Assembly (NCBI RefSeq): GCF_006345805.1
Contig: NC_043006.1
Location: 67,952,001-68,016,000, forward strand
Direction of reading: 5' to 3'
Source: Octopus sinensis
Lineage: Eukaryota
DNA length: 64,000 bases
The translations under genes and the position numbers were made by a program. The stretch's first letter is position 1; every line of letters begins with the position of its first letter. Under the pieces are notes generated by a model, which was not told where the DNA came from, ran no database searches, and was given only the letters and a program-made list of their open reading frames with translations. Shown in pieces: positions 5,048 through 55,073 of this stretch.

Positions 5048-6935
5048 CCTATATATATATATATATATACATACACACACACACACATATGTTGGCGGAC
5101 TCAGAATCATAATTAGTGTTGAAATGCCTCGCTGAATTTAGAGTTATGGCCCTTCACATTATAATTACAATTCCTATTAAGGCTGATTTTGTTTCATAGA
5201 CTTTTATTAAACCCAAAAATTTATACCACTCATCATCTATAGATACAGTTGATTACTGAAAGACCAAGCAACTGACTGAGCAAATGACATGCAAGCACAC
5301 CATGACATAGTGTTGAACTGGATAATGAGTTAAGCGTGTCACCGATAGGCTACCAGTTTCTGTCTATTGATTTTATCGAGGTTTTGGTTGACCCAAATCT
5401 ACTATAGAAAACACTTATTCAATGTGCTATGCAATGAGGTTGGAGCTATATATATTTAATGTAGTGAATATAAAAAAAATATTATTAATAATTATGCCGT
5501 CAGAAAACAAACAACCTTGCTCAGTGTCAAATGTGAATTTTATGAAGGAGTGTGGGGCCAAGTAGTTAGGGCATTGGGCCCTCAATCATGGGATCATGGA
5601 TTTTACTTCTGGAACAGGTTCAATGGGTCAAAGGATAGGAGGGTTGAGAGGATGTCCATGTCTGCTCAGGACTACATAGGCACCTAAAACAATTAGCAAA
5701 AGCACGTACAAGCTACCCGTTTGTAAGCAACAGCTAAGGTAAGCTTTTAATATTAACCTAATCTCAAAGCAGCAAGTTGGCAGAATTGTTAGCATGTCAG
5801 GGTAAAATGCCTAGTGGCATTTTGTCCATCTTTACGTTCTGAGTTCAATTCCATGTGAGGCTGACTTTATCTTGCATCCTTTTGGGGTCAATAAAATAAG
5901 TACCAGTTGAGCACTTGGGTTGATGTAATCAACTTACCCACTCCCCAGAAATTGCTGGCATTGTGCCAAAATTTGAAACCAACATTAATCTAACCCTTTC
6001 AACACATATGGAGGACAACTCTGGTCATATTTTGGACCTCCTCAGTGAAACAGACACCACCATATTTACTGAAGTAGTGATGAGAAACCCACTAAGATGA
6101 TGTACAATATTGTATATGAGTAGGTGTGAATAATTAGCATATTTTAAGAACTTTTAGAAACTAGTTCACTTAGGTTAATTACTCAGACTCATTGATGTAT
6201 GAAGTTTACTTTTTGTTGAAGAAAGTTTTTACTATTGTCAGCACCACTCCAGGGGTTTTGTCAATCAGACTGACTCCAGTGTCATTTTTGTCTCATGTTA
6301 GGTGCAGGCATGGCTTTATGATAAGAAGTTTACTTCCCAACCACAAGGTTCCAGGTTCAGCACCACTGCATGGCACCTTGGGTAAGTGTCTTCTAATACA
6401 GCCTTGTGAGATGGAAACCGAAAGAAGCAAAATGTGCATGCATGTGTGTTTCTTAGTGTCTGGGCCTCACCACTGCTTGACAACTGGTGTTGATGTGTTT
6501 ATGCCCCCATAACTTAGCAGTTCAGCAAGAGACTGATAAAATAAGTATCAGGCTTGAAACAAAAATAGTGGGGTCGATTCACTCAACTAGAATTCTTCAA
6601 GGTGGTGCACTCTGGTTAACAAATACACAGATACAAGATGGATTTTTGCATTGTTTCCATCAATCGAACATCCCTTACAAAAAACTGATCAACACAGAAG
6701 CATAGTAGAAACGTTTACTGCTATGCCAAGCAGTGGGGTCAATTCCAGAATCACAGGATTACAAAACAAATTTAACCACACAGCAATGTCTCTGCCAATA
6801 TGCAAATGTTTAGATTTATAAGAATATTCCACCCACACCAGCTGGAACAAACTCAGTACATAACACTTGAAGAAATGAAAACTTTTCATCTCGACTAATA
6901 CGGACAAAAATAGAAAACTGAAGCAGGCTTCTCAC

Positions 6936-19708: not shown

Positions 19709-20183
19709 ACATACACAAACACAAATACACACACACATATCCATACATACATACATACATACATACATACATACATAATCACCATCATCATTTAACACCT
19801 ATTTTCCATGCTGGCATGGGTTGGATGATTTGACAAGAGCTGGCAATGCCAGGAGCTGCACCAGATTTTATTGTCTGTTTTGGCTCGGTTTCTACAGCTG
19901 GATGTTCTTCCTAACACCTACTACTTTACAGAGTGTACTGGGTGCTTTTTATATAGTGCCAGCACCAACAGGATCACCAAGAACCTTGCACAGCAAATCT
20001 TGCATACCAAAAAAAATCCCTCAGCTGAGAGTGAAGTAGTAGTATTGAGTGGGTTTGGCTTTGTGCCAGTTGAGAGATTTAAATTAAAGAGGGGACAGAT
20101 AAAAGTATTTTGCTGTAGATACATGGATGCTGTAGTTGGAAAGCAAAATGAGAGTGAGTTGGAGAGTAAGATAAAGAAAGTGA

Positions 20184-20624
20184 AAGGTGGCGAGCTGGCA
20201 GAAAAGTTAGCACGCCAGGCGAAATGCTTAGCGGTATTTCGTCTGCTGTTATGTTCTCTGCTCAAATTCTGCTGAGGTCGACTTTGCCTTTCGTTCTTTC
20301 AGGTTCGATAAATTAAGTACACACTGGGGTCGATGTAATCGACTTAATCCTTTTGTCTGTCCTTTTTTGTCTTCTCTATGTTTAGCTCCCCTGTGGGCAA
20401 TAAAGTAATAAGAAACGTTAGCACGCTGGGCAAAATGCTTAGCGGTATTTCATCTGCCGTTACGTTCTGAGTTCAAATTACGCTGAGGCCGACTTTGCTT
20501 TTCATCCTTTCAGGGTCGATAAATTAAGTACCAGTTACGCACTGAGTCAATCTAATCGACTTAATCCCCTTGTCTATCCTTGTTTGTCCCCTCTATGTTT
20601 AGCCTCTTATGGGCAATAAACAAA
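20184..20624 (+). mobile_element. Two head-to-tail family C SINEs inside one 17-bp TSD
   Basis: TSD taagataaagaaagtga at 20167-20183 and 20625-20641. Other family C copies at ~26505-26725(+), 46070-46290(+), 56395-56600(+) and 62335-62565(-). Confidence 0.8.
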
Positions 20625-20739
20625 TAAGATAAAGAAAGTGACGGTGAGAGGGATGATGATAGAGTTGTGTCAGGACATACCTCTGAGGTACATACATGCA
20701 TGCATACATACATGCACACACACACACACGCACGCACAC

Positions 20740-22247: not shown

Positions 22248-22809
22248 ATCATCATCATCATCATCATCGTTTAGCGTCCGTTTTCCATGCTAGCATGGGT
22301 TGGACGGGTCAACTGGGGTCTGTGAAGCTGGAAGGCTTCGTCAGGCCCAGTCAGATCTGGCAGTGTTTCTACGGCTGGATGCCCTTCCTAATGCCAACCA
22401 CTCCGCGAGTGTAGTGGGTGTTTTTTACGTGCCACCTGCACAGGTGCCAGACAGAGCTGGCGAACGGCCACGAACGGATGGTGCTTTTACGTGTCACCGG
22501 CACGGGGCCAGGCGATGCTGGCAACGGACACGAACAGATGGTGCTTTTACGTGCCACCGACACGGGGCCAGACAAAGCTGGCAACCGGCCACGAACGGAC
22601 GGTGCTTTTACGTGTCACCGGCATGGGGTCCAGCCGAGGCTGGCAACGGACGCGAACGGATGGTGCTTTTACGTTCCACCGACACGGTTGCCAGACAGAG
22701 CTGGCAAACGGCCACGATCGGACGGTGCTTTTACGTGTCACCGGCACGGGGGCCAGCCGAGGCTGGCAACGGACACGGACGGATGGTGCTTTTACGTGCC
22801 ACCGACACA
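22248..22809 (-). mobile_element. V-domain-like SINE ((GAT)n tail) carrying an internal 60-63 bp tandem array
   Basis: Reverse complement contains ggttggcattaggaagggcatccagccgtagaaa (V-domain-like). Family also at ~525-780, 10530-10770, 24250-24510 and 51480-51680. Confidence 0.75.
22417..22809. repeat. GC-rich minisatellite, 6 full units plus a partial unit of 60-63 bp, alternating A/B
   Basis: Units start with ggtgc(t)tttacgt at 22417, 22480, 22540, 22601, 22662, 22724 and 22785. Confidence 0.92.
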
Positions 22810-23389: not shown

Positions 23390-23532
23390 CCTCCTTCCCT
23401 TCTTTCCTGAGTGTGAATAATACTTTAATTGTTCCACGTCCTTGCGTTGCTGTTTTTTTTCTTTTTTTCTGTGTTTTCTTGTTTGGATTAACTTTATATA
23501 TATATATATATATTATATATATATATATGTAA

Positions 23533-23582
<50 letters not shown>

Positions 23583-23583
<1 letters not shown>

Positions 23584-24226
23584 TACAACTGCACTCATAA
23601 TGTTTTGGGTACAATATGTAGTCACACCCAACCCAATTTTGCGGAATCAGTGCCCCATCTTTATTTTGATCTTTTTAATAACATTTATGAACTTTCATCC
23701 CTTCTGTATCGAAGTTGATGGAATTAAAATAAAAAATCAAGCTCTAATTCAAACTTAAAAGCAAAACAGCTGTTGAATAGTAATTGTTTTTGTGCACTAG
23801 CTTACAGACTGCGTAAGCCTTTGATACAAGAAAAAATATCAATAAGCCTTTGCAGACAAACGGGAGCAAAATTCACCTTCACCCATGCCACGAAAAAGCA
23901 GCGGCAACCAAAAAAAAGTGACCAGTAAAAGTTTTTTGAAATAATCTAGCCTTGTTTGCGAAAATTTCCAAAACTTTTTGCATACATTTGATGCAAAAGA
24001 ACCTGAGGTTCATGCAGTCGTGTGTTTTATTGAAATTGTGCAAAAAACACGACCTCTACACCCCCAAATGGATCGAAAGAACCTTTTTTTTTGCCCTAGA
24101 GGCCATTCCTTTCAATTGAGCAAACTCAAAGTTGCCATGCAAACTCCCAGCACTTTTAACATAGGTGGGCAAATTTTCAGATCAATCTGACCATGCTTAC
24201 TAACACTTTTGCCTGCACAACTGCAT
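23583..24226. mobile_element. Possible Tc1-type non-autonomous DNA element
   Basis: Weak inverted ends tacaactgcactcataatgtt / aacacttttgcctgcacaactgca next to TA repeats. Confidence 0.3.
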
Positions 24227-26006
24227 GTGAGACAGCGACCACCCTTTTCACTGGCTCCTGTTCAGGTGACACATAAAAAGCACCATTTGAGCATGGCCGT
24301 TGCCAGTACCGCCTGACTGGGCCTCGTGCCGGTGGCACATAAAGCACTCACTACACTCTTGGAGTGGTTGTCATTAGGAAGGGCATCCAGCTGTAGAAAC
24401 TCTGCCAGATCAGATTAAAGCCTGGTGCAGCCATTTGGCTCACCAGTCCCCAGTTAAACTGTCCAACCCAAGCTACTATGGAAAGCGGATGTTAAATGAT
24501 GATGATGATGATATATATATATATGTAAATACACAAACACACACATGCATGCATGTACGCATGCGCACACACACACACACACATACACATCAATATATAC
24601 TGCCATATATAGTGTCTATAAGATACTCGGAATTCAAAATATCTGATTACTAGACCATCATGGCTTCAACCACCAGTAATTTGAAAAGAGGGGAGAGAGA
24701 GTTGGAAAGAGAGAAAGGTGGAAGATAGAAGGAAAGAGGAAGGAGAGGGGGAGAGAGTGAGAAGGAGAGACAGGGAAGGTAGGGTGATGATAGAGCAGTA
24801 AATCTGAATAAGAGCTGAATCAGACCATGACAAGCTATCTAAACCATGTCAGCATGGATTGTGGCCATAAGATGATAATATGTACAGGTGTGCCATGTAA
24901 TTGAGAATAAAACTGAATATGATGAAAAACAACGACACTAGATAGACAGAAAAAAACTATAGTTTAAGTAAAATGGCATACACAAATATACTAAAGAAAC
25001 ATTCAATAAAATCTCCCTTAGTCTCAATGATGACCTCAATTCAATCTAAAAAGAATCAGGTTCTCAAATATGTTGTCCATCATGCATACAAATAAAGCCC
25101 TCAACAAGTCCAGAGTGTTGTGGAACCACTTGTTGGTCTCCTTCTCAGTGTTTATGCCCTGAGATATGATGATCATGAAAACACTTTGTCATTCACTTGG
25201 GAAGAGAAGCTTATTATTATCATTATTATTATTATTATTATCATTATTATTATTATTATTATTATTATTTCCCTAAGGTTGACTTTACTTTCCATCCTTT
25301 CGGAGTTGATAAAATAAGTACCAGTTGAACACTGGGGTTGATGTAATTGACTAGCCCCTTCCCCCAAAATTTCAGGCCTTGTGCTTATAGTAGGAAGGAT
25401 TATTATTATTTAAATAGAGTCAACTACTGCTACTTGGAAGTTATCTTGAAAGTGACCAGTTTTCAGAGGCTGGATTGTTGCAGTGCACAACAGCAAACTA
25501 AACAGCTACCCATCAGAACTGTTTTGCATTGCAAGCTCAGTCTGTCAGGGCTACTTACAGTCTCCTCTTCTGTATGTGCTGGTTCTCAAGTCATGGCCGT
25601 AGAGGTCAGAACAGTTGAGAGGCATCCCTTTCAAACTTGGATATGGGAGGACAGTGTTGGCATATGTGGACATCATGTCATGGTGTCAGATGCCTCCAAA
25701 GTAGAGATAGTTGGTACCATTCTGAGGTAATACAAGTCGATTGCAGGGACCAAAATCAACGCTGACAAGTCAGTGGGTTTGTAGTTGGGCATCTGGACAG
25801 GCAGATCAATGCTGTTGGACAGCATTGTTGGATGCTAGACTGGCAAACCAGTTAAACTGCTCAGATTCTAGTTCAGTCCCAACCTCCAGTTGGATAAAAA
25901 CTGAACAGGATGACAGGTCTTACCCAGAAATGGGCAGAAAGGAAGCTGTCCCTGAAATGTCAAGCAAAAGTGGTGAATGCCTATATAGCTTCCCTCATTA
26001 TTTATA

Positions 26007-26237
26007 TATTTCTTTACTGCCCTCAAGGGGCTAAACATAGAGGGGACAAATAAGGGCAGACAAAGGGATTAAGTCGATTACATCGACCCAGTGCGAAACT
26101 GGTACTTTATTTATCGACCCCGAGAGGATGAAAGGCAAAGTCGACCTCGGTGGAATTTGAACTCAGAACGTAACGGCAGACAAAATACGGCTACGCATTT
26201 CGCCCGGCGTGCTAACGATTCTGCCAGCTCGCCGCCT
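26007..26237 (-). mobile_element. tRNA-derived SINE (family C, Meta-domain-like core), young copy fused to the tRNA-Tyr half
   Basis: aaggcggcgagctggcagaatcgttagc...ttctgagttcaaattcc...gcctttcatcctctcggggtcgataaataaagtaccag...aaagaaata tail. CpGs are retained. Confidence 0.85.
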
Positions 26238-26250
26238 TATTAAATTCTTA

Positions 26251-26287
26251 CTACAGTTCTCCGCTCTACCAACTGAGCTATCGCGAG
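26251..26287 (-). pseudogene. tRNA-Tyr(GTA) 5' exon only, retroposed fragment
   Basis: CTCGCGATAGCTCAGTTGGTAGAGCGGAGAACTGTAG aligns to positions 1-37 of eukaryotic tRNA-Tyr, ending exactly at the canonical intron site. No 3' half is nearby. Confidence 0.8.
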
Positions 26288-27240
26288 AAACAAATTATTT
26301 ATAGCCTGACCATCATGCCCTGCCTCAGTTACTGCTTGATGAGGTTGGAGAATCTCTTATTCATCTTCTTTTGGAAGGGACATGTTCCAACTGTTAGGTG
26401 GTCAGTCTGCTACCAGCACCCTCTGTGTGGTGGCTTAGGCATGCTGTGGCTGCTGATGCAGGGACATGCACTGAGGTTGCACCTCCTGCAATGATTTCAG
26501 GAAGGGCAGCAAGCTGGGAGAATCGTTAGCACACCGGGCGAAATGCTTAGCGGTATTTCGTCTGCAGTTACGTTCTGGGTTCAAATTCCACCGAGGTTGA
26601 CTATGCCTTTCATCCTTTCGGGGTCGATTAAATAAGTACCAGTTGCGCACTGAGATCGATGTAATCAACTTAATCACTTTGCCTGTCCTTGTTTGTCCCC
26701 TCTCTGTTTAGTCCCCCTGTGGGTAATAAATATATAATAATAATAATAATAATAATAATTGTGTACAGTGCTCAGGTGCACTACAACTCATCTAAAGTGT
26801 ATATATAATCAGGTGTAGTTTCGGCGGATTTCGGAAAGCATGTGGGCCTTAAAGGATGCAGTGTCATGGCAGTCAACAACTGACGCAGGCAATATATATA
26901 TACACATACATTTGATCACTTTAAACAAATGATTCGTGCAGGTCATATGTCGTCACCGACGGGAGAATCCACCATACAAACACACACACACACATTAAAG
27001 TTAGATAAGGCCGGTTTATGAGATTACTTTAGATTTCACGTTCATGAAGAGTTTAGTGTTATGACGTATCACCAGACCCCAAAACCTGTTGGCTTTTGGG
27101 ATTTGATGATACAAGGTAATCCCATAAAGCTGCCTTACCTAACTTTCATATACTGCTCTAAAGAGTGCGTCTTTTTTTCGGATTTGTTTTTACAAGCGAT
27201 ATATATATATGTGTGTGTGTGTATGGATATGTCCGTATAT

Positions 27241-27872: not shown

Positions 27873-27972
27873 NNNNNNNNNNNNNNNNNNNNNNNNNNNN
27901 NNNNNNNNNNNNNNNNNNNNNNNNNNNNNNNNNNNNNNNNNNNNNNNNNNNNNNNNNNNNNNNNNNNNNNNN
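27873..27972. other. Assembly gap (100 N)
   Basis: Run of exactly 100 N; true size and contiguity are unknown. Confidence 0.99.
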
Positions 27973-33529: not shown

Positions 33530-34759
33530 ATGACTACAAGCAACAATAATAATAATAAGACATGTGTGGGTGAACCACTGTCTTTACACAACTTGTCTTT
33601 AAGCAGCAACGGCAGTGATACATATGAGGAGAAGGAGCTGTCTCCTGCTGTCATTTGTGATGACAGTGGTATGCAGTCCCTTGATGAGAGTAGCGACAGC
33701 ACTAGGGAAAGTGTGTCTGAGAAAACAGAGCAAGATGAGTTGGAAGATGATGTTTTTCTAAAAGCTCTTTATAACTATGAATATAGTTACGACAATGGAG
33801 ATAAAGTGACTATGGTTAAAGGGGACATATACCGGCTGGTGTCAAATAGTGCTGATGACTGGTGGCAAGTTGAAAAAATAGAAGATGGAAATGTAATCTA
33901 TGTTCCTGCTGATTATGTATTTAAATTGGAGGATTATTACCCAGGCAACAACAGACCATTGCCACCAATTATTGCCAAAGATACATCTGATAATAGTACT
34001 AAACCAGTTGAAACTAAACCACTTCAAATTAAACCAGCTGAAATCAAACCAGTTGAAACTCAACTACTTGAAACTAATCTGTTTGAAACTAAACCAGTTG
34101 AAACTCAACTACTTGAAACTAATCTGTTTGAAACTAAACCAGTTGAAATCAAAACAGTTGAAGCTAAACAAAAGCCTCATGCTACTGGTGAGAAAAGGAA
34201 GAAACATCCTGCTCCTGTTGCCACACCCGAGATGTTAGCTGCTGCCAAAGCAAAGGCTCCAACCAGACCAAACACAACTGTACTGAACCGAAGTTTTAGT
34301 AGTGATAATGCTGGAACAGTTCCTGTGACTACCTCCTCATCTTTTGGGTGGCCCGATTCATCAGAAACCTCTTCTCAAGCCAATTTTTCTATAAACAACA
34401 ACAACAACAACAATAATAATAACAATAACTTTGATGCTTGTATCCAGGTTGTGGTTAATTCTGATAATCAGTACCCCCAAGAGATATTGCGAAGTGGAAA
34501 TTATAGTACTTTTGGTAAAGGTTCAATCAATCCAATCAGAACATTGGAAAGGCCCAAAAGCTATCACTATGGGGCATCCAGCAGATATCTTGAAAGCCCT
34601 GAACATGGGCATGAAAAAACAATTCAATTAGGGAAGTGTCAACATTCTCAAAGCAATAGTGATTATATAAACCTTGATGAACTGGGTCCTGTTTTAAAAT
34701 ACCAAAAGGAACCTGAAAATGGAAGTGTGGAAAGTCTTACCAATCCAAAAGACAGAAGA
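33530..34759 (+). CDS. ARHGAP12: First coding exon (410 aa) of an ARHGAP9/12/27-family SH3-containing RhoGAP
   Basis: Acceptor tttctc...atgtag|G at 33523/33524, ATG at 33530, donor AGA|gtaagt at 34759/34760 (phase 0). SH3 domain ALYNYEYSYDNGDKVTMVKGDIYRLVSNSADDWWQVEKIEDGNVIYVPADYV resembles the ARHGAP12/27 N-terminal SH3 (YDYEY...DDWWQV...YVPAQYV), with a downstream DYINLDEL motif. The exon is well supported; the paralog symbol is only a nearest match and the GAP domain is not in the window. Confidence 0.75.
34001..34165 (+). repeat. Coding 15-nt (pentapeptide) repeat x11 with an exact 45-nt tandem duplication
   Basis: KPVET KPLQI KPAEI KPVET QLLET NLFET KPVET QLLET NLFET KPVEI KTVEA. 34046-34090 is identical to 34091-34135. 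Confidence 0.92.
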
Positions 34760-36744
34760 GTAAGTAGAATAAATATTCTTTTTTGTTTACAAGTTTTCTT
34801 CAAAACTTTTTTTTCCCTTCATATTAAACCAGAACTAACATCCATTTCTAGCATATTATCTCCCCTAAGAAGATGCTGGCTATCAAATATCTGAAACTGT
34901 TTCTTTCTGTTGGCTATGTCTTTTTGTTTAAGAAGGAATTTTCATTTCTGCTGTTTGAATTTGCTATCTCAGTTCAAATACTTGTGCAACCCCCAAATGT
35001 TTTGAAATTATCTTGCCCACTACTCTAATTTCTATAGAATGGCAGATAACATCTCTTGTTTTCTCTGTTGTTTTAATGGCTCTTGGCATTCTGCTGTCCT
35101 TATAAGGCTCAGACATAACTTGCAGTTTAAACATTGATATGTCATTTTTTTGTGAAGGCATGTGGCCTAGTGATTAGGCAGTTGCACCTCACAATCACTA
35201 GATTGTGGGTTTGATACCCTGATCAGATGGTGCGATGTGTTCTTGAGTAAAACACTTCATTTCACATTGCTCCAGTCCCCCTTTCGATTGGGAGGAATGT
35301 TGGCCTGCTTGCTTAGCCAGCGAGGATGGGAGGGTATCATTTGAAGGCCAAAACAATGCAAAATGCATTGTAACTTGTGATGTGTAACAACATCTGATAG
35401 CCTCATCAGTCATGTGGTCACATGATGTTGTTTTTTTGTGGTGAGATTCTGAATATCTGCCTGATAGGTGTAAGGCCTGAAATTTTGGGAGATGAGATTA
35501 GTTGATTTCATCAACCCCGGTTCTTGACCAGTACTATTTTATCGAACCTGAAAGGCAAAATCAACCATAGCAGAATATCTGCCTGATAATGCCATTGTGT
35601 TTGTGTCATTTATACAGTTAGGTGTTGATATATCTCTCATCATTAGATAACTTTGTTTTACTTCACAAATCCTTACCTGAAATCCTATAAGCCTTTACCC
35701 ATTTCATCATGGTTCTGATACAGGTGCATGAGATGTATTTACCTTCATTATTGCTTGTTTCGCAATTCACTAGATATCTATTTCTGGCTAAGGTAGCAGG
35801 TCCAGAATAAAAATTCTTTGACCTTCTGACCATATCTTTGCTTAACATACTTTTTGTTTGCATTCAACAACAAGGAAAGTCTATAACATTTCCCATAAGC
35901 TGCAAGTGTGGGTCAGTATTTTGACCAGATTGATCATATATTGGCTTTATAGTTATGCAAAGAACAGGGAATAAAAGAAAGTCTTAGCTACTAACAGTTG
36001 AAGAAGATGACTTGTTTCTCGTTTAATTTCTAATGCTTTAGAAGCTGAGGTATTTATTCTGATAAGTATGGATAATATATACAAAGATAGCTTAGTTATT
36101 ACTCTTTTACTTGTTTCAGTCATTTGACTGTGGCCATGCTAGAGCACCGCCTTTAGTCGAGCAAATTGACCTCAGGACTTATTCTTTGTAAACCTATTGG
36201 GTTTTTTTTTTGCCGAACCACTAAGTTACGGGGATGTAAACACACCAGCATCAGTTGTCAAGCGATGTTGAGGGGACAAACACAGACACCCCTCTCCCTC
36301 ACACGACGGGCTTCTTTCATTTCCTGTCTACCAAATCCACTCGCAAGGCTTTGGTCGGCCCGAGGCTATAGTAGAAGACACTTACCCAAGGTGCCACGCA
36401 GTGGGACTGAACCCGGAACCATGTGGTTGGTAAACAAGCTACTTACCACACAGTCACTCCTACACCTATAACCATTTTGTTACCATATTTCTGTTTAAAT
36501 GCACTGGCTTTGCTTCAATTAATTTTGAAAATAAAGTATTTAGTAAAATAATCTTGTCATTATCAAGCTGGTATTTGGAATGTAAATTAGCATGAAATTC
36601 TGATGGAAACCTTTTAGATCACTTTAACCCTTTAGCATTTAAAGAGGCTATATCTCGCCAAAACATTCTCCTTATTTTGTGTTTAAACTGGCTAGATCTG
36701 GTTTCTCACATCAAACCTACAATCATCATCATACATACATATAT

Positions 36745-37475
36745 ACATACATTATGGCTGCCCCCTTGTTATCGAGTATGGCCATTGCACGAAGCTTAAC
36801 TGTTACTGGTACTGTGATCAAATGTGACTTTTTAGCCCAGCTAAAGATCTACAATGTCTTGTACAAAATTGGCAACTAAAACCTTTACTTGTAATAGCCG
36901 GCAGTAGTTGTAACTGGGCTTCATATACTTTTGCATGTTGTTTAAGTCCTCCTGCTGAATTACACTCTCTTCCACATGCCCGACAGATATGATTAGTATG
37001 GTGTGTTACACTACCACCAGTGGCCAGGTTGTCACTCATCTGTCTCGTTTTATGACTACGAAGATGACTCATGAATCCTGCTTTACTGAGGCAGGGTCTT
37101 GCACAGACATTGCATGTCAGAATCAAAGGAAGACCCTTCCCTTCTGGAAGTGTAACAGCGATGCCCTTCCTGACATCCCTCCTTACTTTCTCATGTGCAA
37201 CTCGAGATTTCTCAAACGTGGCTGTCCCCTCATGCACAATCCTTCTCCACCTGCTACGATCAATAGCTATGCCTTCCCATGTGTCAAGAGTGATGCAGGC
37301 ATCTCTTAAGGAAGCCTTCAGCAAGTCCTTATACCTCTTTTTTGGTTTATGTGGAGGTCGTTCTCCTTTAGCTAACTCTCCATAAAAGAGTTGTTTTGGC
37401 ATCCTTGAATCCTTCATTCTGACCAGATGACCACTCCATCTGAGCCTTTGCTTTAACACAAGAGCTTCTATACAT
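36745..37475 (-). mobile_element. RTE-BovB-like LINE 3' end with three C2H2-like zinc fingers
   Basis: LRWSGHLVRMKDSRMPKQLFYGEL...IAIDRSRWR, then CNVC..SHLRSH, CRAC..KQHAKVY and CQFC..KSHI. Short 3'UTR with (ATGT)n tail. Confidence 0.88.
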
Positions 37476-38729
37476 ACATACATACATACATATATACATC
37501 ATCATCGTTTAACGATCACGCTCGAATAGTGCTTTTTACGTGCCGCCGGCACGGAAGCCAGTTTGTTGCTCTGGCAACGATCATGCTTGGATGGTACTTT
37601 TAGCGCTCCACTAGCACAGATGCCAATCATCAAATTTGATTTTGATTTTGAGGCAAGTGAAATTGAAATTGAAATCAAATTCGATGACTGGCATCTTTCT
37701 AAAAACGAAAAGTCAAAACCTCAAAACTACCAGATAATGCAAGATTAATTCAAAACATGTGAAGAAACAAGCTTTACTTTTGACAGAATAACGTGGATGC
37801 CAAAGGGCTAAAACAAGAAGTTTGTATCATAGAACCAGAAGTGGTATCAAAAGTGCTAAAGAATCTAGAACCAGATTGGATTTGAGTAGAGAAGAGGTGT
37901 AAGTTGACATGTCTCTGTGTGAAGTAGACACTAATATTGGGTTTACAGCTGGAGTATTCTCCAACTTTAAACCTAATTTAAAACATTAATCTCTATGGCA
38001 TGCCAATAATATAAACCCCTCTTGTTTTATTGTGATATTTAGTTTTTACATCCAAGAATACAAAAAACCAATGGGGGATGAACAAATCCCATGTGAGTTT
38101 TTTGATATTCTTAATTTGTTAGCAGTCTGAAATTAATTTAAACACTGTCTTCTTTTGTTCATATTAGCTTTACTCTGGTTTCAAATTAACTCAGTTCCAT
38201 TTTGACAGCCACCAAAGAAATATCTGCACCTCCAGGCATAATTTATAACAGTTTCACTATCAGTGACCACTGATTTTATTTTTATCTTTATAAATTATAT
38301 TATCTTTGTTGTTATCATGGATCTTTGTTCGAACTACATATTTAGATTAACTAATGATGTGTTTAATGGTTTGAGAATAAAGGCTGTAGGTTGTTTATCA
38401 ACACTGTGTGTATATTTTTCATTGTTTAATCTATGAAACATGGAGAGATGAGAAGTTCTACTAATTTCAATGGGATTTAAATCTCAAACTGTAGTGGTCA
38501 ATTTAAAATTCCCTGTTAAGCTATTGTTCAACCTGATATCTTGTTGTTGGGTACTGTTGGCCAGCTCTGCTTAAGGATTTGACCCATGGCACAGAGGCAG
38601 ATAATCAGATGTTTAAATCTATGGCATATGAGTTCCTTAATGTATTTTGATGAGGTATTCATCATGTAGTACCACTTGATGGTGTGATTATACAACCTAG
38701 CATGGCTGGAACCAAGACATACCATGGAG

Positions 38730-45400: not shown

Positions 45401-48400
45401 AAGCATAATGAGGTACTACTAGAAATAACATCTGAATTTCTCCTAAATCATAACACTACAGATTTAAAAAAAAAACAAACAGCAATAACAAAAAAGATAA
45501 ATTGGATAATGTAGCTCAAAATTCAATTGGGGATAAACAACAAAACCTGTTACATAGAAGGGGGCGCTGAAAAGTTCCTGGCTTTTGAGTAAAAGAAAAT
45601 ACAGGAAGATCAGTTAATTATGATTTTATTCAACATATTCCTTTCAAAGATTCATACATTTATTGCAGCAGTCCTTCACTTTTTCTAAGCCATGTAACAG
45701 AATCAGGCCTTTAAAGCCATGAACTTTTCAGCACCCACTCATATAGTCCACTTCATTCACTGTCAGAGTTTTACTGCCATACACCATCTTACACATACCA
45801 CATGCAGTTCTCTATATTCACTATCCATGTTTCACTGCTACACGCCATCATTCCTCTTATATACTTCACATGTAGTCCTTTCCAGTCACTGTTCATGTTT
45901 CACTGCCATACACCATTGCACATCTGACACACACCACATTCTTCAGTCTTCTCCATTCATTGTCCATGTTTCACTATCACGCACCATCACACGTCTCACA
46001 CACCTTTGTAATGAGAGAGAGAAACCCATTGTTACTAATAAGAACTAAGGTCTATATATTTATACACAAGGTGGTGAGCTGGCAGAAACATTAGCATGCT
46101 AGGCGAAATGCTTAGCGGTATTTTGTCTGTCTTTACGTTCTGAGTTCAAATTTCGCTGAGGTTGGCTTTGCTTTTCATCCTTTCGGGGTTGATAAATTAA
46201 TTACCAGTTGCATACTGGGGTCGATCTAATTGACTGGCTCCCACCCCCAAAATTTTGGGCCTTGCCCCTAGAGTAGAAAAGTATATATTTATACTAGATC
46301 TATATTTAAGCAATTCATTATTTCATTCTTTGGCAACTATTGCTGCTACTAATTGCAATGGAGTAGATTGTGCAGCAATGTTCTGGTTCCTTGTGAGTCA
46401 ACCATTATTTACTCTGTTAATATATTTAGTTCTTAAGGCAGTGAGTTATCAGAATTGTTAATATGTTGGACCAAATGCTTAGCAGCAGTTCGTTTGTCCT
46501 TATGTTCTAAGATCAAATTCCACCAAGGTTGACTTTGCCTTTCATTCTTTTGGTGTCGATAAAATAAATACCAGTTGAACACTAGGGTTGATGTAATTAA
46601 CTTACCCGTTCCCCTGAAATTGCTAGCCTTTGTCAAAATTGGAAACCAATGTATTTAGTTCTCACTTCTCTTTCATCAAACAAAACTACTTTCTGGTTAC
46701 TACTGATCATTCTAGCAATGAATTGTCTTAAAGATTTGTGTCTCACATCCATCCCAAATCTGTAGCTTAAGGCAGTCCTTAGTCATAGTAAGAGCTGCAT
46801 CATCCTTCTGGCTTCCCTTCTCACCAGTGACTTCTCACTAATCCACTACATTACAACATATGAGATATTAGTAACATTTCGTTTCTTCTTTTTCATCATT
46901 TTGCCCTTTACATAAGGGGCAGCCTATGGCGTAAGAGATATTCTCCACTCAACATTTGTCAACCCACTTTCACTATTGATCCTCATCTTCCACCATTGAT
47001 ACTGTTCCATGGTCAAGCCAACACCACCACTAAATCTATCACTGCAGCTAATGTCGTTGCTGCTTAGTCCAAAGTCAACTTATAACTACTCATCCCAGTC
47101 ATGACCGTCCTGCCTTTTCATGGTCATGTAAGATTACATCGTCTAATGTGTTTGAAGGAGATTTAGCTGCTGTTTCTAGTTCCATTATTGACTTGTTGTA
47201 TCCAATACTGCAAAGTTAAATCTGCTTGATCACTGCTGACAATTACATCACTAAAGAACAAGGAGGCATTATTTGGATGTTACTGAATTAAGTATTAAAA
47301 GTCCATATCATTTATTGTTCTTGTTGTTAATGTTCTTGTTGGTGTTTACTTTCTGCTCAGTTCTGATTGACTAGAACTATGGTCAAAAATGTCAGTCTGG
47401 ATATATTGTATAGGTTACAGAATGTGGTGGTGTGGTTATATTTTTCATATTACAATGTGATGCCAGCTGCATAAGAAACAATGTGTTGACATAATTAATA
47501 CAAAGATCACTAAGCATTTAACCAGAGTTACTCGTATGGTGTTGACAGCATTGCATAATGGTCAGAATATATTATTTTCATTTTGTTTTATTGTCCAGTT
47601 TGTGTGTGTGTTGTTGCTGTGGCATATGATGTGTTTTGGAGACATTCAAATTGGGTAGAGTGCATCCCTGTCCAGGAGAAACCTTGATTAATTTCTGGAG
47701 AAGAGCAAAAGAAGAGCTAACCTTTTTTTACTGGACTTATATTTAATTTATTTAGGCACAGTGATAAAGGCAGAGAAAAGGGAGGATGAGGGGATTGAAC
47801 AGGAGGAAAAACAGTGTTACACTACATTGGAGAAATGGGGACAAATTGCTTCTATGTTCACCCTAAGCTTCAACAGAATAGCACTTAAGCTAGTAACTAC
47901 TCCCCACTTAACCAACAAAAGTAGAGAAAAAAATGTACTTAAAGAAGCCCATAAGTCACAAAACACCATCAGTAAAGATGACACATCATATGCCATCTAC
48001 ATTGACTAAAAAAATGTTTTGCATTGTGGGTGAGGTGTGGCTAATTAGTACTCAAATATTATATTCCTTATTTCTTTGAGTTATTAGAATAAAAGAGGAG
48101 GCGTCATTATATGTTAATTTGATCTGTACCATCCTCAAAATACGTAAAGCCACTGGGCTTAAATTTCTATGCATGCGAACACATGTACTGATGCAGTCCA
48201 CCTACACGCTTGCAATCCATTCAAAAAGACAAAGGCACTTATCATAAAATAAATGAATATGTATAAAAAATACACATTTAACCATCCATACCTTTCTCTC
48301 ATGGAATCCACATCATATACATGACCACATGCGTGCGTGCGTGCATGCACACACACACACACGCACACACACACACATGAACAGGCTCACACCTGTACTC

Positions 48401-54019: not shown

Positions 54020-55073
54020 ATAGACAAAATTTAGCATCCTGGTGTTATCAAGTACCTGTAGAAAAAAGGGTCTAACCCCTGCCAAGGACATTCATGCTTA
54101 CATGGTTGTTATATTAGGGGATGATGCTCCAACTTTATTGACAATGCAAAAGTGGGCAGCTGAATTTTGGAGGGAAGGGAGAGTCTTGAAGATAACCAAG
54201 ATCTGGACGTCCTGCAATTGCCACCATCGAGAAAAACATTGATCATATTCACCACATGCTGAAGGATGATAGGCGATTGACTATAAATCAAATAGCCAAT
54301 GCTATTAGCATATCCCGTGAGAGAGTTGAAAATATTCTGCACAATGAACTTGGCATGAGGAAGGTTTCTGCTTTATGGGTGCCACATCTTCTGACACCTG
54401 ATCAAAACCACACCAGGCTGATCATATCATGGGAAAACTTGGCATTGTTTCATGCAGCTCCAGCTGGTTTCCTTGAATGTTTCTTAACTGAGGATGAGTG
54501 CTGGCTTCATCATTTTGTGCCAGAGACAGAGAAGGCCAAGGTCATTTCATCTGCAGAGAAAGTGATAGCCTCAGTTGTTTGGTATGCAAAAGACGTGTTT
54601 ATTTACTATCTTGAAAAGGACCACACCATCAGTGCAGTGTACTATGCCAACTTGCTGAGGCAGTTACAAAAGGCTATAAAGACCAAACATCCAGAAAAAC
54701 TGACAAAAGGGGGTCATGTTTCATTAGGACAATGCTCCAGCACACAGGTTCTTGGTTTCAATGACTGCTGTGTGTGACTGTGGTTTTGAAGTGTCTGACC
54801 ATTCTCCTATTTCCTATCTCACTGTTGTCTGTTTCCCAACATGATAAAAACACTTGGCTGGGAACTAGTATCACAGTGATGATGTTATCATATTTGTTGT
54901 TGATGACTTTTTTGAGCAACAGGATGAAAGCTTCTTTAATGGAATCCAAGTGCTGCAACACTGATGGAAGAAATGTGTGGAGCGCAAGGGGGACTATGTT
55001 GAAAAATAAACCTCATTCGGTCACATTCCATGAGAGTATCTTGGCCAGACTATGAACTTTTCAGCTGACCCTC

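What the first reader, a model, noticed from the sequence alone, without database searches (positions are those of the whole stretch)
25997..26303. Chimeric retroposon: unprocessed pre-tRNA-Tyr 5' half fused to a SINE, inserted as one unit
Seen: on the minus strand, a 6-nt leader (TTGTTT), the exact 37-nt 5' exon of tRNA-Tyr(GTA), ~13 nt of intron-like sequence (TAAGAATTTAATA) and then a complete family C SINE. The whole cassette sits between a perfect 10-bp direct repeat ATTATTTATA (25997-26006 and 26294-26303). Removing the cassette and one repeat restores the host L1/Tx1 frame (…NAYIASLIIY|SLTIMPC…), so both parts arrived in one event. Established: eukaryotic tRNA-Tyr genes have an intron after position 37. 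Inference: leader plus intron means the template was a primary Pol III transcript. Either a SINE landed in a tRNA-Tyr gene's intron and created a composite Pol III unit, which would be a new SINE subfamily at birth, or reverse transcriptase switched templates onto pre-tRNA.
Basis: partly seen in the sequence, partly recalled or inferred. Interest (0 to 1): 0.75.

Follow-up and report, generated by a model that had tools for sequence, protein, structure and literature searches.

The report
Pre-tRNA-Tyr fragment fused to a SINE
One retroposition event inserted a hybrid DNA copy here, made of the first half of an unspliced tyrosine tRNA precursor joined to a complete short repeat (SINE); it is a clean example of a known kind of reverse-transcriptase "template jump", not a new kind of element.

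Summary
On the minus strand, 26303→25997, the sequence reads:
- TATAAATAAT
- TTGTTT
- a 37-nt tRNA-Tyr(GTA) 5' half
- about 12 nt that cannot be mature tRNA
- a full-length SINE
- TATAAATAAT

The 10-mer occurs nowhere else in the 64 kb (chance about 4e-4). Neither part has its own target-site duplication. Removing the cassette gives a continuous LINE-like reading frame, and a paralogous LINE copy is uninterrupted at that point. So both parts arrived in one event.

About ten other SINE copies in the window start at AAGGYGGCGAGC, four of them directly after their own duplications. None has the Tyr head, so the head is not part of the normal consensus.

Best explanation (about 0.55): the LINE reverse transcriptase reached the 5' end of the SINE RNA, jumped onto a nuclear pre-tRNA-Tyr, and copied it to its 5' end. 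The main rival (about 0.3) is a SINE that had landed in a tRNA-Tyr intron and was transcribed from the tRNA start site. Only a genome-wide search can separate the two. None was possible, because the available collections hold no matching DNA.

Verdict: a new member of a known kind (chimeric retrocopies; pre-tRNA retropseudogenes). Interest is moderate to low.

The parts
26294..26303 (-). 5' target-site duplication, TATAAATAAT (ATTATTTATA on the + strand)
   Evidence: Only two copies exist in 64 kb, exactly at the two ends of the cassette.
26288..26293 (-). TTGTTT, six bases between the duplication and tRNA position 1. Candidate 5' leader of a Pol III primary transcript.
   Evidence: for the sequence. 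The leader reading is inference, because no reference tRNA-Tyr gene was available.
26251..26287 (-). 37-nt 5' half of tRNA-Tyr(GTA), positions 1-37. It holds a perfect A box, TAGCTCAGTTGG.
   Evidence: Rfam tRNA, 3'-truncated, model positions 1-36, 16.8 bits, with GUA aligned to the anticodon; unique in the window at up to 3 mismatches. A-box pattern.
26239..26250 (-). TAAGAATTTAAT, intron-like filler that begins exactly at the canonical 37/38 intron site of eukaryotic tRNA-Tyr. The boundary with the SINE is uncertain by 1-2 nt.
   Evidence: It cannot pair as positions 39-43 of a mature tRNA. The intron origin is inferred.
26007..26238 (-). Full-length tRNA-derived SINE, AAGGCGGCGAGCTGGCAG ... 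GGGCAGTAAAGAAATA, with a B-box-like GTTCAAATTC at 26162. It is the youngest-looking copy in the window.
   Evidence: alignment with 9 other copies, with the 5' and 3' ends coinciding with TSD-defined ends of other copies; 17 CpG retained against 11 or fewer in the others.
25997..26006 (-). 3' target-site duplication, TATAAATAAT
25340..26504 (+). Host: decayed non-LTR retrotransposon fragment (region downstream of the reverse-transcriptase motifs). It is interrupted by the cassette and bounded by other SINE copies at about 25276-25352 and 26505-26747.
   Evidence: the frame is continuous across the empty site; paralogue L001 is uninterrupted at the site and carries AYVDN ... KINVDKS ... LGSW motifs upstream; no Pfam hit.

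Best explanation
The cassette is a bipartite chimeric retrocopy made at the RNA level during one target-primed reverse transcription.

Proposed steps:
1. The endonuclease and reverse transcriptase of the SINE's partner LINE nicked the AT-rich site ATTATTTATA inside an old LINE fragment.
2. Reverse transcription started at the SINE RNA's 3' tail (...AAAGAAATA) and copied the SINE to its very 5' end (AAGG...).
3. Instead of stopping, the enzyme moved onto a second RNA, a nuclear, unspliced, 5'-unprocessed pre-tRNA-Tyr. It entered about 12 nt into the intron.
4. It copied that RNA to its 5' end, through the 5' exon and a roughly 6-nt leader.
5. Second-strand synthesis then produced a single 10-bp target-site duplication around the whole unit.

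Shown by the sequence: the architecture, the single duplication, the full-length SINE, the non-mature nature of the tRNA piece, and the clean empty site.

Inferred: that the junction arose by template switching, and that the extra bases are a real leader and a real intron.

The product is probably a one-off, dead-on-arrival insertion. It does carry a tRNA A box 118 nt upstream of the SINE B box and a T4 run about 28 nt downstream of the element, so Pol III transcription of the composite is conceivable.
For: - One event: a perfect 10-bp repeat sits exactly at the outer ends and is unique in the window (chance about 4e-4). No repeat longer than 4 nt flanks either the SINE alone or the Tyr piece alone.
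- Clean empty site: the frame is restored and a paralogue is continuous there.
- The donor was copied to its end. The SINE starts at the same AAGG as copies whose 5' ends are fixed by their own duplications, namely those at 46068, 46434, 62569 and 20184.
- The acceptor is not a mature tRNA. The bases after G37 cannot form the anticodon stem, and extra bases precede position 1.
- The Tyr head is absent from all other SINE copies in the window.
- Precedent in the literature:
  - LINE reverse transcriptases copy unprocessed nuclear pre-tRNAs (Schmitz 2004, as cited in PMC5322556 and PMC4476161).
  - Half-length (1-37) tRNA/LINE-1 chimeras with a single TSD exist in primates (PMC13174262).
  - SINE head replacement by template switching onto a tRNA has been proposed for PittSINE (PMC5729268) and for mollusc SINEs (PMC4758252, PMC4824008).
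- End-to-end template jumping from a donor's 5' end is a biochemical property of the R2 reverse transcriptase (Bibillo and Eickbush 2002/2004; my own knowledge, not checked here).
- A possible second chimeric insertion lies in the same window: a SINE-SINE pair inside one 16-bp duplication at 20168-20640.
Against: - Nothing in the sequence separates this from a fused source gene. Both predict a Tyr transcription start at the 5' end, a full-length SINE and the SINE tail at the 3' end.
- An end-to-end jump would be expected to land on a 3' end of the acceptor RNA. The 12-nt piece does not look like a complete intron, because it has no G three bases from its end to pair with C32, as the conserved anticodon-intron pair of eukaryotic pre-tRNAs requires (established knowledge). 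So the acceptor end must have been a degraded or internal site.
- The leader starts with T, whereas Pol III usually starts at a purine.
- The primate tRNA/LINE-1 chimeras are mostly antisense, and this one is sense.
- Copy number in the genome is unknown.
Confidence: 0.55

Rival explanations
1. Composite source gene, or 5' transduction. A full-length SINE had earlier inserted, in the same orientation, about 12 nt into the intron of a tRNA-Tyr gene elsewhere in the genome. Pol III, directed by the tRNA's A box and upstream region together with the SINE's B box, started at the tRNA start site and read through the SINE. The LINE enzyme recognised the SINE tail and retroposed the leader + exon 1 + intron stub + SINE as one RNA. 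The family could have several copies, which would make it a nascent dimeric-head SINE subfamily.
For: - The architecture is equally compatible with this reading.
- The intron stub TAAGAATTTAAT resembles the AT-rich target sites this SINE family uses in the window: AAGATAAAGAAAGTGA, AGAAACTAAAGAACAT, TATTTAGTTCT, TATATATTTATAC.
- The composite keeps a perfect A box at +8 of the tRNA part and a B-box-like motif 118 nt downstream, with no T run of 5 or more inside. The one TTTT is a CpG-to-TpG change relative to the TTTCG of other copies.
- The SINE is very abundant, with about 10 or more copies in 64 kb, so a hit in a tRNA-Tyr intron somewhere in the genome is not far-fetched.
Against: - The target is tiny, only a few dozen nucleotides per tRNA-Tyr gene.
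- No second copy of the junction or of the Tyr head exists in the window.
- 5' transduction by SINEs is rarely documented, whereas template-switch chimeras are common.
- It needs two rare events rather than one.
Confidence: 0.3
2. Two separate insertions that happen to abut. Either a tailless pre-tRNA-Tyr retropseudogene landed first and a SINE later inserted exactly at its 3' border, or the order was reversed.
For: - Retroposons nest densely here. SINE copies lie at about 25276-25352 and 26505-26747 on either side, and a SINE-SINE pair lies at 20184-20636.
- 3'-truncated, tailless pre-tRNA retropseudogenes are a known class (PMC5322556).
Against: - Each insertion of this SINE family in the window makes its own 10-16-bp duplication.
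- Here the longest repeat around the SINE alone is TAAT, and around the Tyr piece alone it is AGGC.
- The second element would have had to land to the nucleotide between the first element and its duplication, and without making one of its own.
Confidence: 0.07
3. Not a real biological junction. It would be an assembly chimera, or a chance resemblance of AT-rich or tRNA-like sequence to tRNA-Tyr.
For: - The window is a draft-type assembly with a 100-N gap at 27873-27972.
- The tRNA match is below Rfam's gathering score, which is inevitable for a half molecule.
Against: - The 32-mer GATAGCTCAGTTGGTAGAGCGGAGAACTGTAG was never matched, even at up to 3 mismatches, in 100 shuffles of the window.
- The perfect duplication and the precise restoration of the host frame would not arise from misassembly.
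Confidence: 0.03

Closest known systems
Bipartite chimeric retrogenes made by LINE reverse-transcriptase template switching (U6/L1, U3, 5S, 7SL and Alu chimeras, Buzdin et al. 2002/2003; tRNA/LINE-1 chimeras, PMC13174262)
   Same: - A small Pol III RNA sits at the 5' side and a retroelement at the 3' side.
- One target-site duplication surrounds both parts, and the 3' part ends in its normal tail.
- The tRNA portion is a half molecule ending near position 37, as in the primate tRNA/LINE-1 set.
   Different: - The 3' partner is a full-length SINE rather than a 5'-truncated L1.
- The tRNA part is in the sense orientation, whereas the primate cases are mostly antisense and are ascribed to twin priming of cleaved tRNA halves.
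- It carries leader and intron bases, so the template was a precursor rather than a cleaved mature half.
- The host is apparently a mollusc, and the reverse transcriptase is not mammalian L1.
Tailless pre-tRNA retropseudogenes (Schmitz et al. 2004; PMC5322556)
   Same: An unprocessed nuclear tRNA precursor, 3'-truncated in a single-stranded region, has been reverse-transcribed by a LINE enzyme and integrated.
   Different: Those elements stand alone. Their truncated 3' end abuts the target-site duplication and primes on the target. Here the truncated end is joined to the 5' end of a SINE, and priming took place on the SINE tail.
SINE head exchange and dimerisation by template switching (PittSINE from TguSINE1 + tRNA-Asp, PMC5729268; 5S/tRNA composite DeuSINEs and BivaMD-SINE1, PMC4824008; mollusc jigsaw SINEs, PMC4758252)
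   Same: A SINE RNA and a tRNA-type RNA are joined 5' to 3' in one retrocopy. That is the event postulated as the origin of new SINE heads.
   Different: Those are established multi-copy families in which the new head replaced or extended the old one and is an intact promoter unit. Here only one copy is known, the old head is kept in full, and the added piece is a half tRNA with an intron stub.
Octopus tRNA-derived CORE-type SINEs (OR1/OR2, Ohshima and Okada 1994)
   Same: By recollection only: a tRNA-like head with a B box, followed by a core resembling the MIR/CORE segment (...TTTCATCC...GATAAATAAAGTACC...ACTTAA...). The window's base composition (37% GC) and repeat load fit a cephalopod genome.
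   Different: Not tested, because no reference SINE sequences or cephalopod DNA were reachable. The identity of both the family and the organism is a lead, not a result.

Membership tests
Template-switch chimeric retrocopy (U6/L1-type bipartite retrogene) | Two unrelated RNA-derived modules joined head to tail in the same orientation | tested here: met
   the tRNA-Tyr 5' half plus filler is directly followed by a full-length SINE, both on the minus strand.
Template-switch chimeric retrocopy (U6/L1-type bipartite retrogene) | A single target-site duplication encloses the whole unit, and neither module has one of its own | tested here: met
   a 10/10 repeat sits at the outer ends only (p about 4e-4). 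The longest inner repeats are 4 nt.
Template-switch chimeric retrocopy (U6/L1-type bipartite retrogene) | The 3' module ends in its normal 3' tail at the duplication, showing that priming took place on the retroelement | tested here: met
   the tail ...GGGCAGTAAAGAAATA is identical in extent to copy 62569 and abuts the TSD.
Template-switch chimeric retrocopy (U6/L1-type bipartite retrogene) | The 5' module begins at the true 5' end of its RNA | tested here: inconclusive
   Six extra bases precede tRNA position 1, which is a plausible Pol III leader length. No tRNA-Tyr gene of the organism was available for comparison.
Template-switch chimeric retrocopy (U6/L1-type bipartite retrogene) | No genomic source gene carries the same junction, meaning the fusion was made at the RNA/cDNA level | not testable with these tools
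   Collections hold no DNA of this organism. The SINE-head control pattern gives 0 hits in metagenome, genome and viral contigs.
Composite (dimeric-head) SINE family | Several copies share the junction but have different target-site duplications | tested here: inconclusive
   In the window there is one copy, and none of the roughly 10 other SINE heads carries it. Genome-wide this is not testable (all came back empty and are uninformative).
Composite (dimeric-head) SINE family | An internal Pol III promoter able to drive transcription from the composite's own 5' end | tested here: inconclusive
   Pattern match only: A box TAGCTCAGTTGG at 26280 and B-box-like GTTCAAATTC at 26162, with a T4 run at 25969 downstream. 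There are no expression data.
Tailless pre-tRNA retropseudogene | The 3'-truncated tRNA end directly abuts the target-site duplication, with no other element between them | tested here: not met
   the truncated end is joined to a 232-nt SINE.
Functional intron-containing tRNA-Tyr gene | Complete cloverleaf with a 3' exon (B box, acceptor 3' strand) | tested here: not met
   ARAGORN finds 0 genes and Rfam finds 0 matches at gathering score. No 3' exon follows the SINE, and the flank is LINE sequence.
Octopus CORE-type SINE (OR1/OR2) | Sequence identity to the published consensus, including the CORE domain | not tested
   No reference sequence was available. The resemblance is recalled from memory only.

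The most novel reading that the evidence does not exclude
The junction is not unique. This locus would be one copy of a young composite SINE lineage whose 5' end is a Pol III-transcribed tRNA-Tyr leader, 5' exon and intron stub. That is, a tRNA gene disrupted by a SINE became a new master gene, or this chimera itself became transcribed. It would be a SINE head acquisition caught at its origin, with the intron stub as a built-in marker of the precursor template.
Probability: 0.2. Interest if true: 0.55.

Novelty: new member of a known kind. Interest (0 to 1): 0.35.

Why it matters
New SINE heads and composite SINEs are generally explained by reverse transcriptase jumping from a SINE or LINE RNA onto a tRNA. 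That explanation rests mostly on old, multi-copy families whose origin can no longer be seen.

This locus is a young, unambiguous single-event product of that kind in an invertebrate. The leader and intron bases point to an unspliced precursor, which by established knowledge is nuclear, so the acceptor RNA was probably picked up in the nucleus at the integration site.

It adds a data point and a searchable junction for asking how often such chimeras arise and whether any become active. It does not reveal a new mechanism.

Tried and rejected
Searches that came back empty, and why they say nothing about copy number:
- I looked for more copies of the junction as translated peptides. Two homologous-protein searches covered the antisense frame across the junction and the antisense SINE ORF. 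One full HMMER scan of 1.84 billion representatives used the sense-frame junction peptide. All were empty. Even the very abundant SINE itself returned nothing, so short non-coding ORFs of this genome are not in those libraries.
- Exact-product look-ups for five window ORFs found nothing on record. These included the junction ORF, the flank-SINE ORFs and the 454-aa SH3 ORF, which might have brought in the locus from other assemblies.
- A DNA pattern scan of the metagenome contigs for the tRNA-Tyr 24-mer gave 0 hits. The SINE-head control pattern also gave 0 hits in the metagenome, bacterial/archaeal genome and viral collections. So no cephalopod-like DNA is held there.
- A literal sequence and run-accession search of the paper library gave 0 papers.
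- Schmitz et al. 2004 (PMC524414) is not held.
- Pfam on the decayed host LINE gave no hit, so the L1/Tx1 label stays unverified.

Readings I rejected:
- A mature tRNA or a cleaved mature 5' half as the template. Bases 38 onwards do not fit, and a leader is present.
- This locus being the interrupted tRNA-Tyr source gene itself. There is no 3' exon, and the flanks are continuous LINE sequence.
- A splicing intermediate cut at the 3' splice site as the acceptor. The 12-nt piece lacks the G at -3 needed for the conserved C32-intron pair.
- The Tyr head being part of the ordinary SINE consensus. Other copies start at AAGG directly after their own duplications.
Full report
**What is in the sequence**

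Read on the minus strand, 26303 to 25997 has six parts:
- TATAAATAAT (26303-26294).
- TTGTTT (26293-26288).
- CTCGCGATAGCTCAGTTGGTAGAGCGGAGAACTGTAG (26287-26251).
- TAAGAATTTAAT (26250-26239).
- A 232-nt SINE, AAGGCGGCGAGCTGGCAG ... GGGCAGTAAAGAAATA (26238-26007).
- TATAAATAAT again (26006-25997).

ARAGORN and Rfam at gathering score find no tRNA in the window. That is expected for half a molecule. When the searched stretch is cut at the exon end, the Rfam tRNA model aligns the 37 nt to positions 1-36 as a 3'-truncated match (16.8 bits). The D arm is canonical and GUA sits in the anticodon position, so this is the 5' half of a tRNA-Tyr(GTA). A 32-nt core of it is unique in the window even at 3 mismatches, and was never matched in 100 shuffles.

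The bases after G37 are TAAGAA. They cannot be positions 38-43 of a mature tRNA, which would have to read A + TTCTC to pair with GAGAA at positions 27-31. Eukaryotic tRNA-Tyr genes carry their intron exactly between positions 37 and 38 (established knowledge). The simplest reading is therefore an intron stub. Together with the six bases ahead of position 1, this points to an unprocessed precursor as the template. I could not compare either piece with a tRNA-Tyr gene of the organism, so 'exact exon', 'leader' and 'intron' remain inferences.

**The SINE is complete, and the Tyr piece is not part of it**

BLAST of the cassette against the window finds about ten further SINE copies, all starting at cassette position 61-68. 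With their flanks, four have 5' ends fixed by their own target-site duplications:
- 46068: TATATATTTATAC.
- 46434: TATTTAGTTCT.
- 62569: AGAAACTAAAGAACAT.
- 20184: AAGATAAAGAAAGTGA.

In each, the element begins (T)AAGGYGGCGAGC. The cassette's SINE begins at the same base. It ends at the same ...AAAGAAATA as copy 62569. None of the other copies has anything tRNA-Tyr-like upstream.

The cassette's SINE keeps 17 CpGs against 11 or fewer in every other copy. Several of its differences from the window consensus are retained CpGs or bases of subfamily a rather than decay. With the perfect duplication, this marks it as the youngest copy in the window.

**One event**

- The 10-mer occurs only twice in the 64 kb, at the two ends of the cassette.
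- Shuffling the 120 nt upstream of the SINE recreates it in 84 of 200,000 trials.
- The longest repeat flanking the SINE alone is TAAT. The longest flanking the Tyr piece alone is AGGC. This SINE family regularly makes 10-16-bp duplications.
- Deleting the cassette and one repeat gives a 99-aa open frame...KWAERKLSLKCQAKVVNAYIASLIIYSLTIMPCLSYCLMRLENLLFIFFWKG.... It has the look of the segment downstream of a non-LTR reverse transcriptase.
- The one database relative found is a Logan contig, L001 (70% identity at the protein level). It reads ...KWAERKLSLKGQVEVVNAYVAS-IIYHLT.... At the DNA level it has ATTATATATCACCTGAC where the reconstructed empty site has ATTATTTATA|GCCTGAC. So the target 10-mer is single-copy and uninterrupted in a paralogue.
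- L001 also carries AYVDN ... KINVDKS ... LGSW motifs upstream. This supports a LINE host, but Pfam recognises nothing in the decayed window copy. 'L1/Tx1' is therefore unverified.

**Mechanism**

Two readings fit every feature.

(A) Template switching. The partner LINE's enzyme primed on the SINE tail and copied the SINE RNA to its 5' end. It then continued on a pre-tRNA-Tyr from a point about 12 nt into the intron to that RNA's 5' end.

(B) A fused source gene. A SINE sitting in a tRNA-Tyr intron elsewhere in the genome was transcribed from the tRNA start site and retroposed through the SINE tail.

I favour A, at about 0.55, for three reasons:
- It needs one rare event rather than two.
- Each ingredient is documented:
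  - LINE enzymes copy nuclear unprocessed pre-tRNAs (PMC5322556, PMC4476161).
  - Half-length tRNA/LINE-1 chimeras with a single duplication exist (PMC13174262).
  - Switching from a SINE RNA to a tRNA is the accepted route to new SINE heads (PMC5729268, PMC4758252, PMC4824008).
- The switch occurs exactly at the donor's 5' end, as in end-to-end template jumping of the R2 enzyme (my own knowledge).

B keeps about 0.3, for these reasons:
- The intron stub looks like this family's preferred AT-rich target.
- The SINE is extremely abundant.
- The composite retains a perfect A box (26280) and a B-box-like motif (26162).
- It has no strong internal terminator. Its one TTTT corresponds to the TTTCG of most other copies, a CpG-to-TpG change.

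The stub lacks a G three bases from its end to pair with C32. It is therefore probably not a whole intron, and a splicing intermediate cut at the 3' splice site is unlikely as the acceptor.

Nested independent insertions (about 0.07) and an artefact (about 0.03) are disfavoured by the duplication pattern.

**What could not be done**

The decisive test is the copy number of the junction in the genome and a comparison with the species' tRNA-Tyr genes. That was out of reach.
- Peptide searches across the junction and across the SINE found nothing.
- Exact-ORF look-ups found nothing.
- Pattern scans of the metagenome, genome and viral collections found neither the Tyr 24-mer nor the SINE-head control.

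Because the positive control fails, these negatives say nothing about copy number.

The organism is probably a cephalopod. The evidence is a SINE recalled as octopus OR/CORE-like, 37% GC and the heavy SINE load, but this is a lead only.

**Verdict**

It is a new member of a known kind, namely chimeric retrocopies and pre-tRNA retropseudogenes. It is notable for its clarity, its sense orientation, the presence of leader and intron bases, and its occurrence outside mammals. Interest 0.35.

Noticed in passing
window 20168-20640 (+): A full-length SINE (20184-20410) is joined directly to a 5'-truncated SINE (20411 to about 20624, starting near SINE position 22). The pair is enclosed by one perfect 16-bp repeat, AAGATAAAGAAAGTGA. 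This is a second candidate template-switch chimera. A nested insertion at the tail/duplication border (shared AATAAGA) is not excluded.
   Followed up: partly
window: SINE copies at 5766, 18069, 20184, 20411, 26007, 26505, 46068, 46434, 56387, 62335: The SINE family comes with two different 3' tails on the same head and core. One is ...TTGTCCCCTCTATGTTTAGCCCCTTGTGGGCARTAAAGAAATA and the other is ...CTCCCCCAAAATTTCAGGCCTTGTGCCTATAG. This suggests two LINE partners, or a past tail exchange.
   Followed up: partly
window 33530-34894 (+): A 454-aa open reading frame with an SH3 domain (Pfam SH3_1, E 3.9e-6) and low-complexity Asn and Pro/Thr/Glu-rich repeats. It is probably a large exon of a host gene.
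   Followed up: partly
window 54256-54777 (+) and 36818-37483 (-): A mariner-type transposase fragment (Pfam Transposase_1, E 1.8e-11), and a 221-aa ORF with C2H2 zinc fingers. The N-terminus of the second (RLRWSGHLVRM...) resembles the C-terminal end of a LINE ORF2.
   Followed up: partly
window 22423-22808: A GC-rich tandem array with a 61/123-bp period (about 6.3 and 3.2 copies, 81-90% matches). It generates long spurious ORFs on both strands. A (TA)46 microsatellite follows at 23495-23585.
   Followed up: no
window 27873-27972: A run of 100 N (assembly gap) lies 1.6 kb from the cassette. The assembly is therefore draft-grade around the finding.
   Followed up: no
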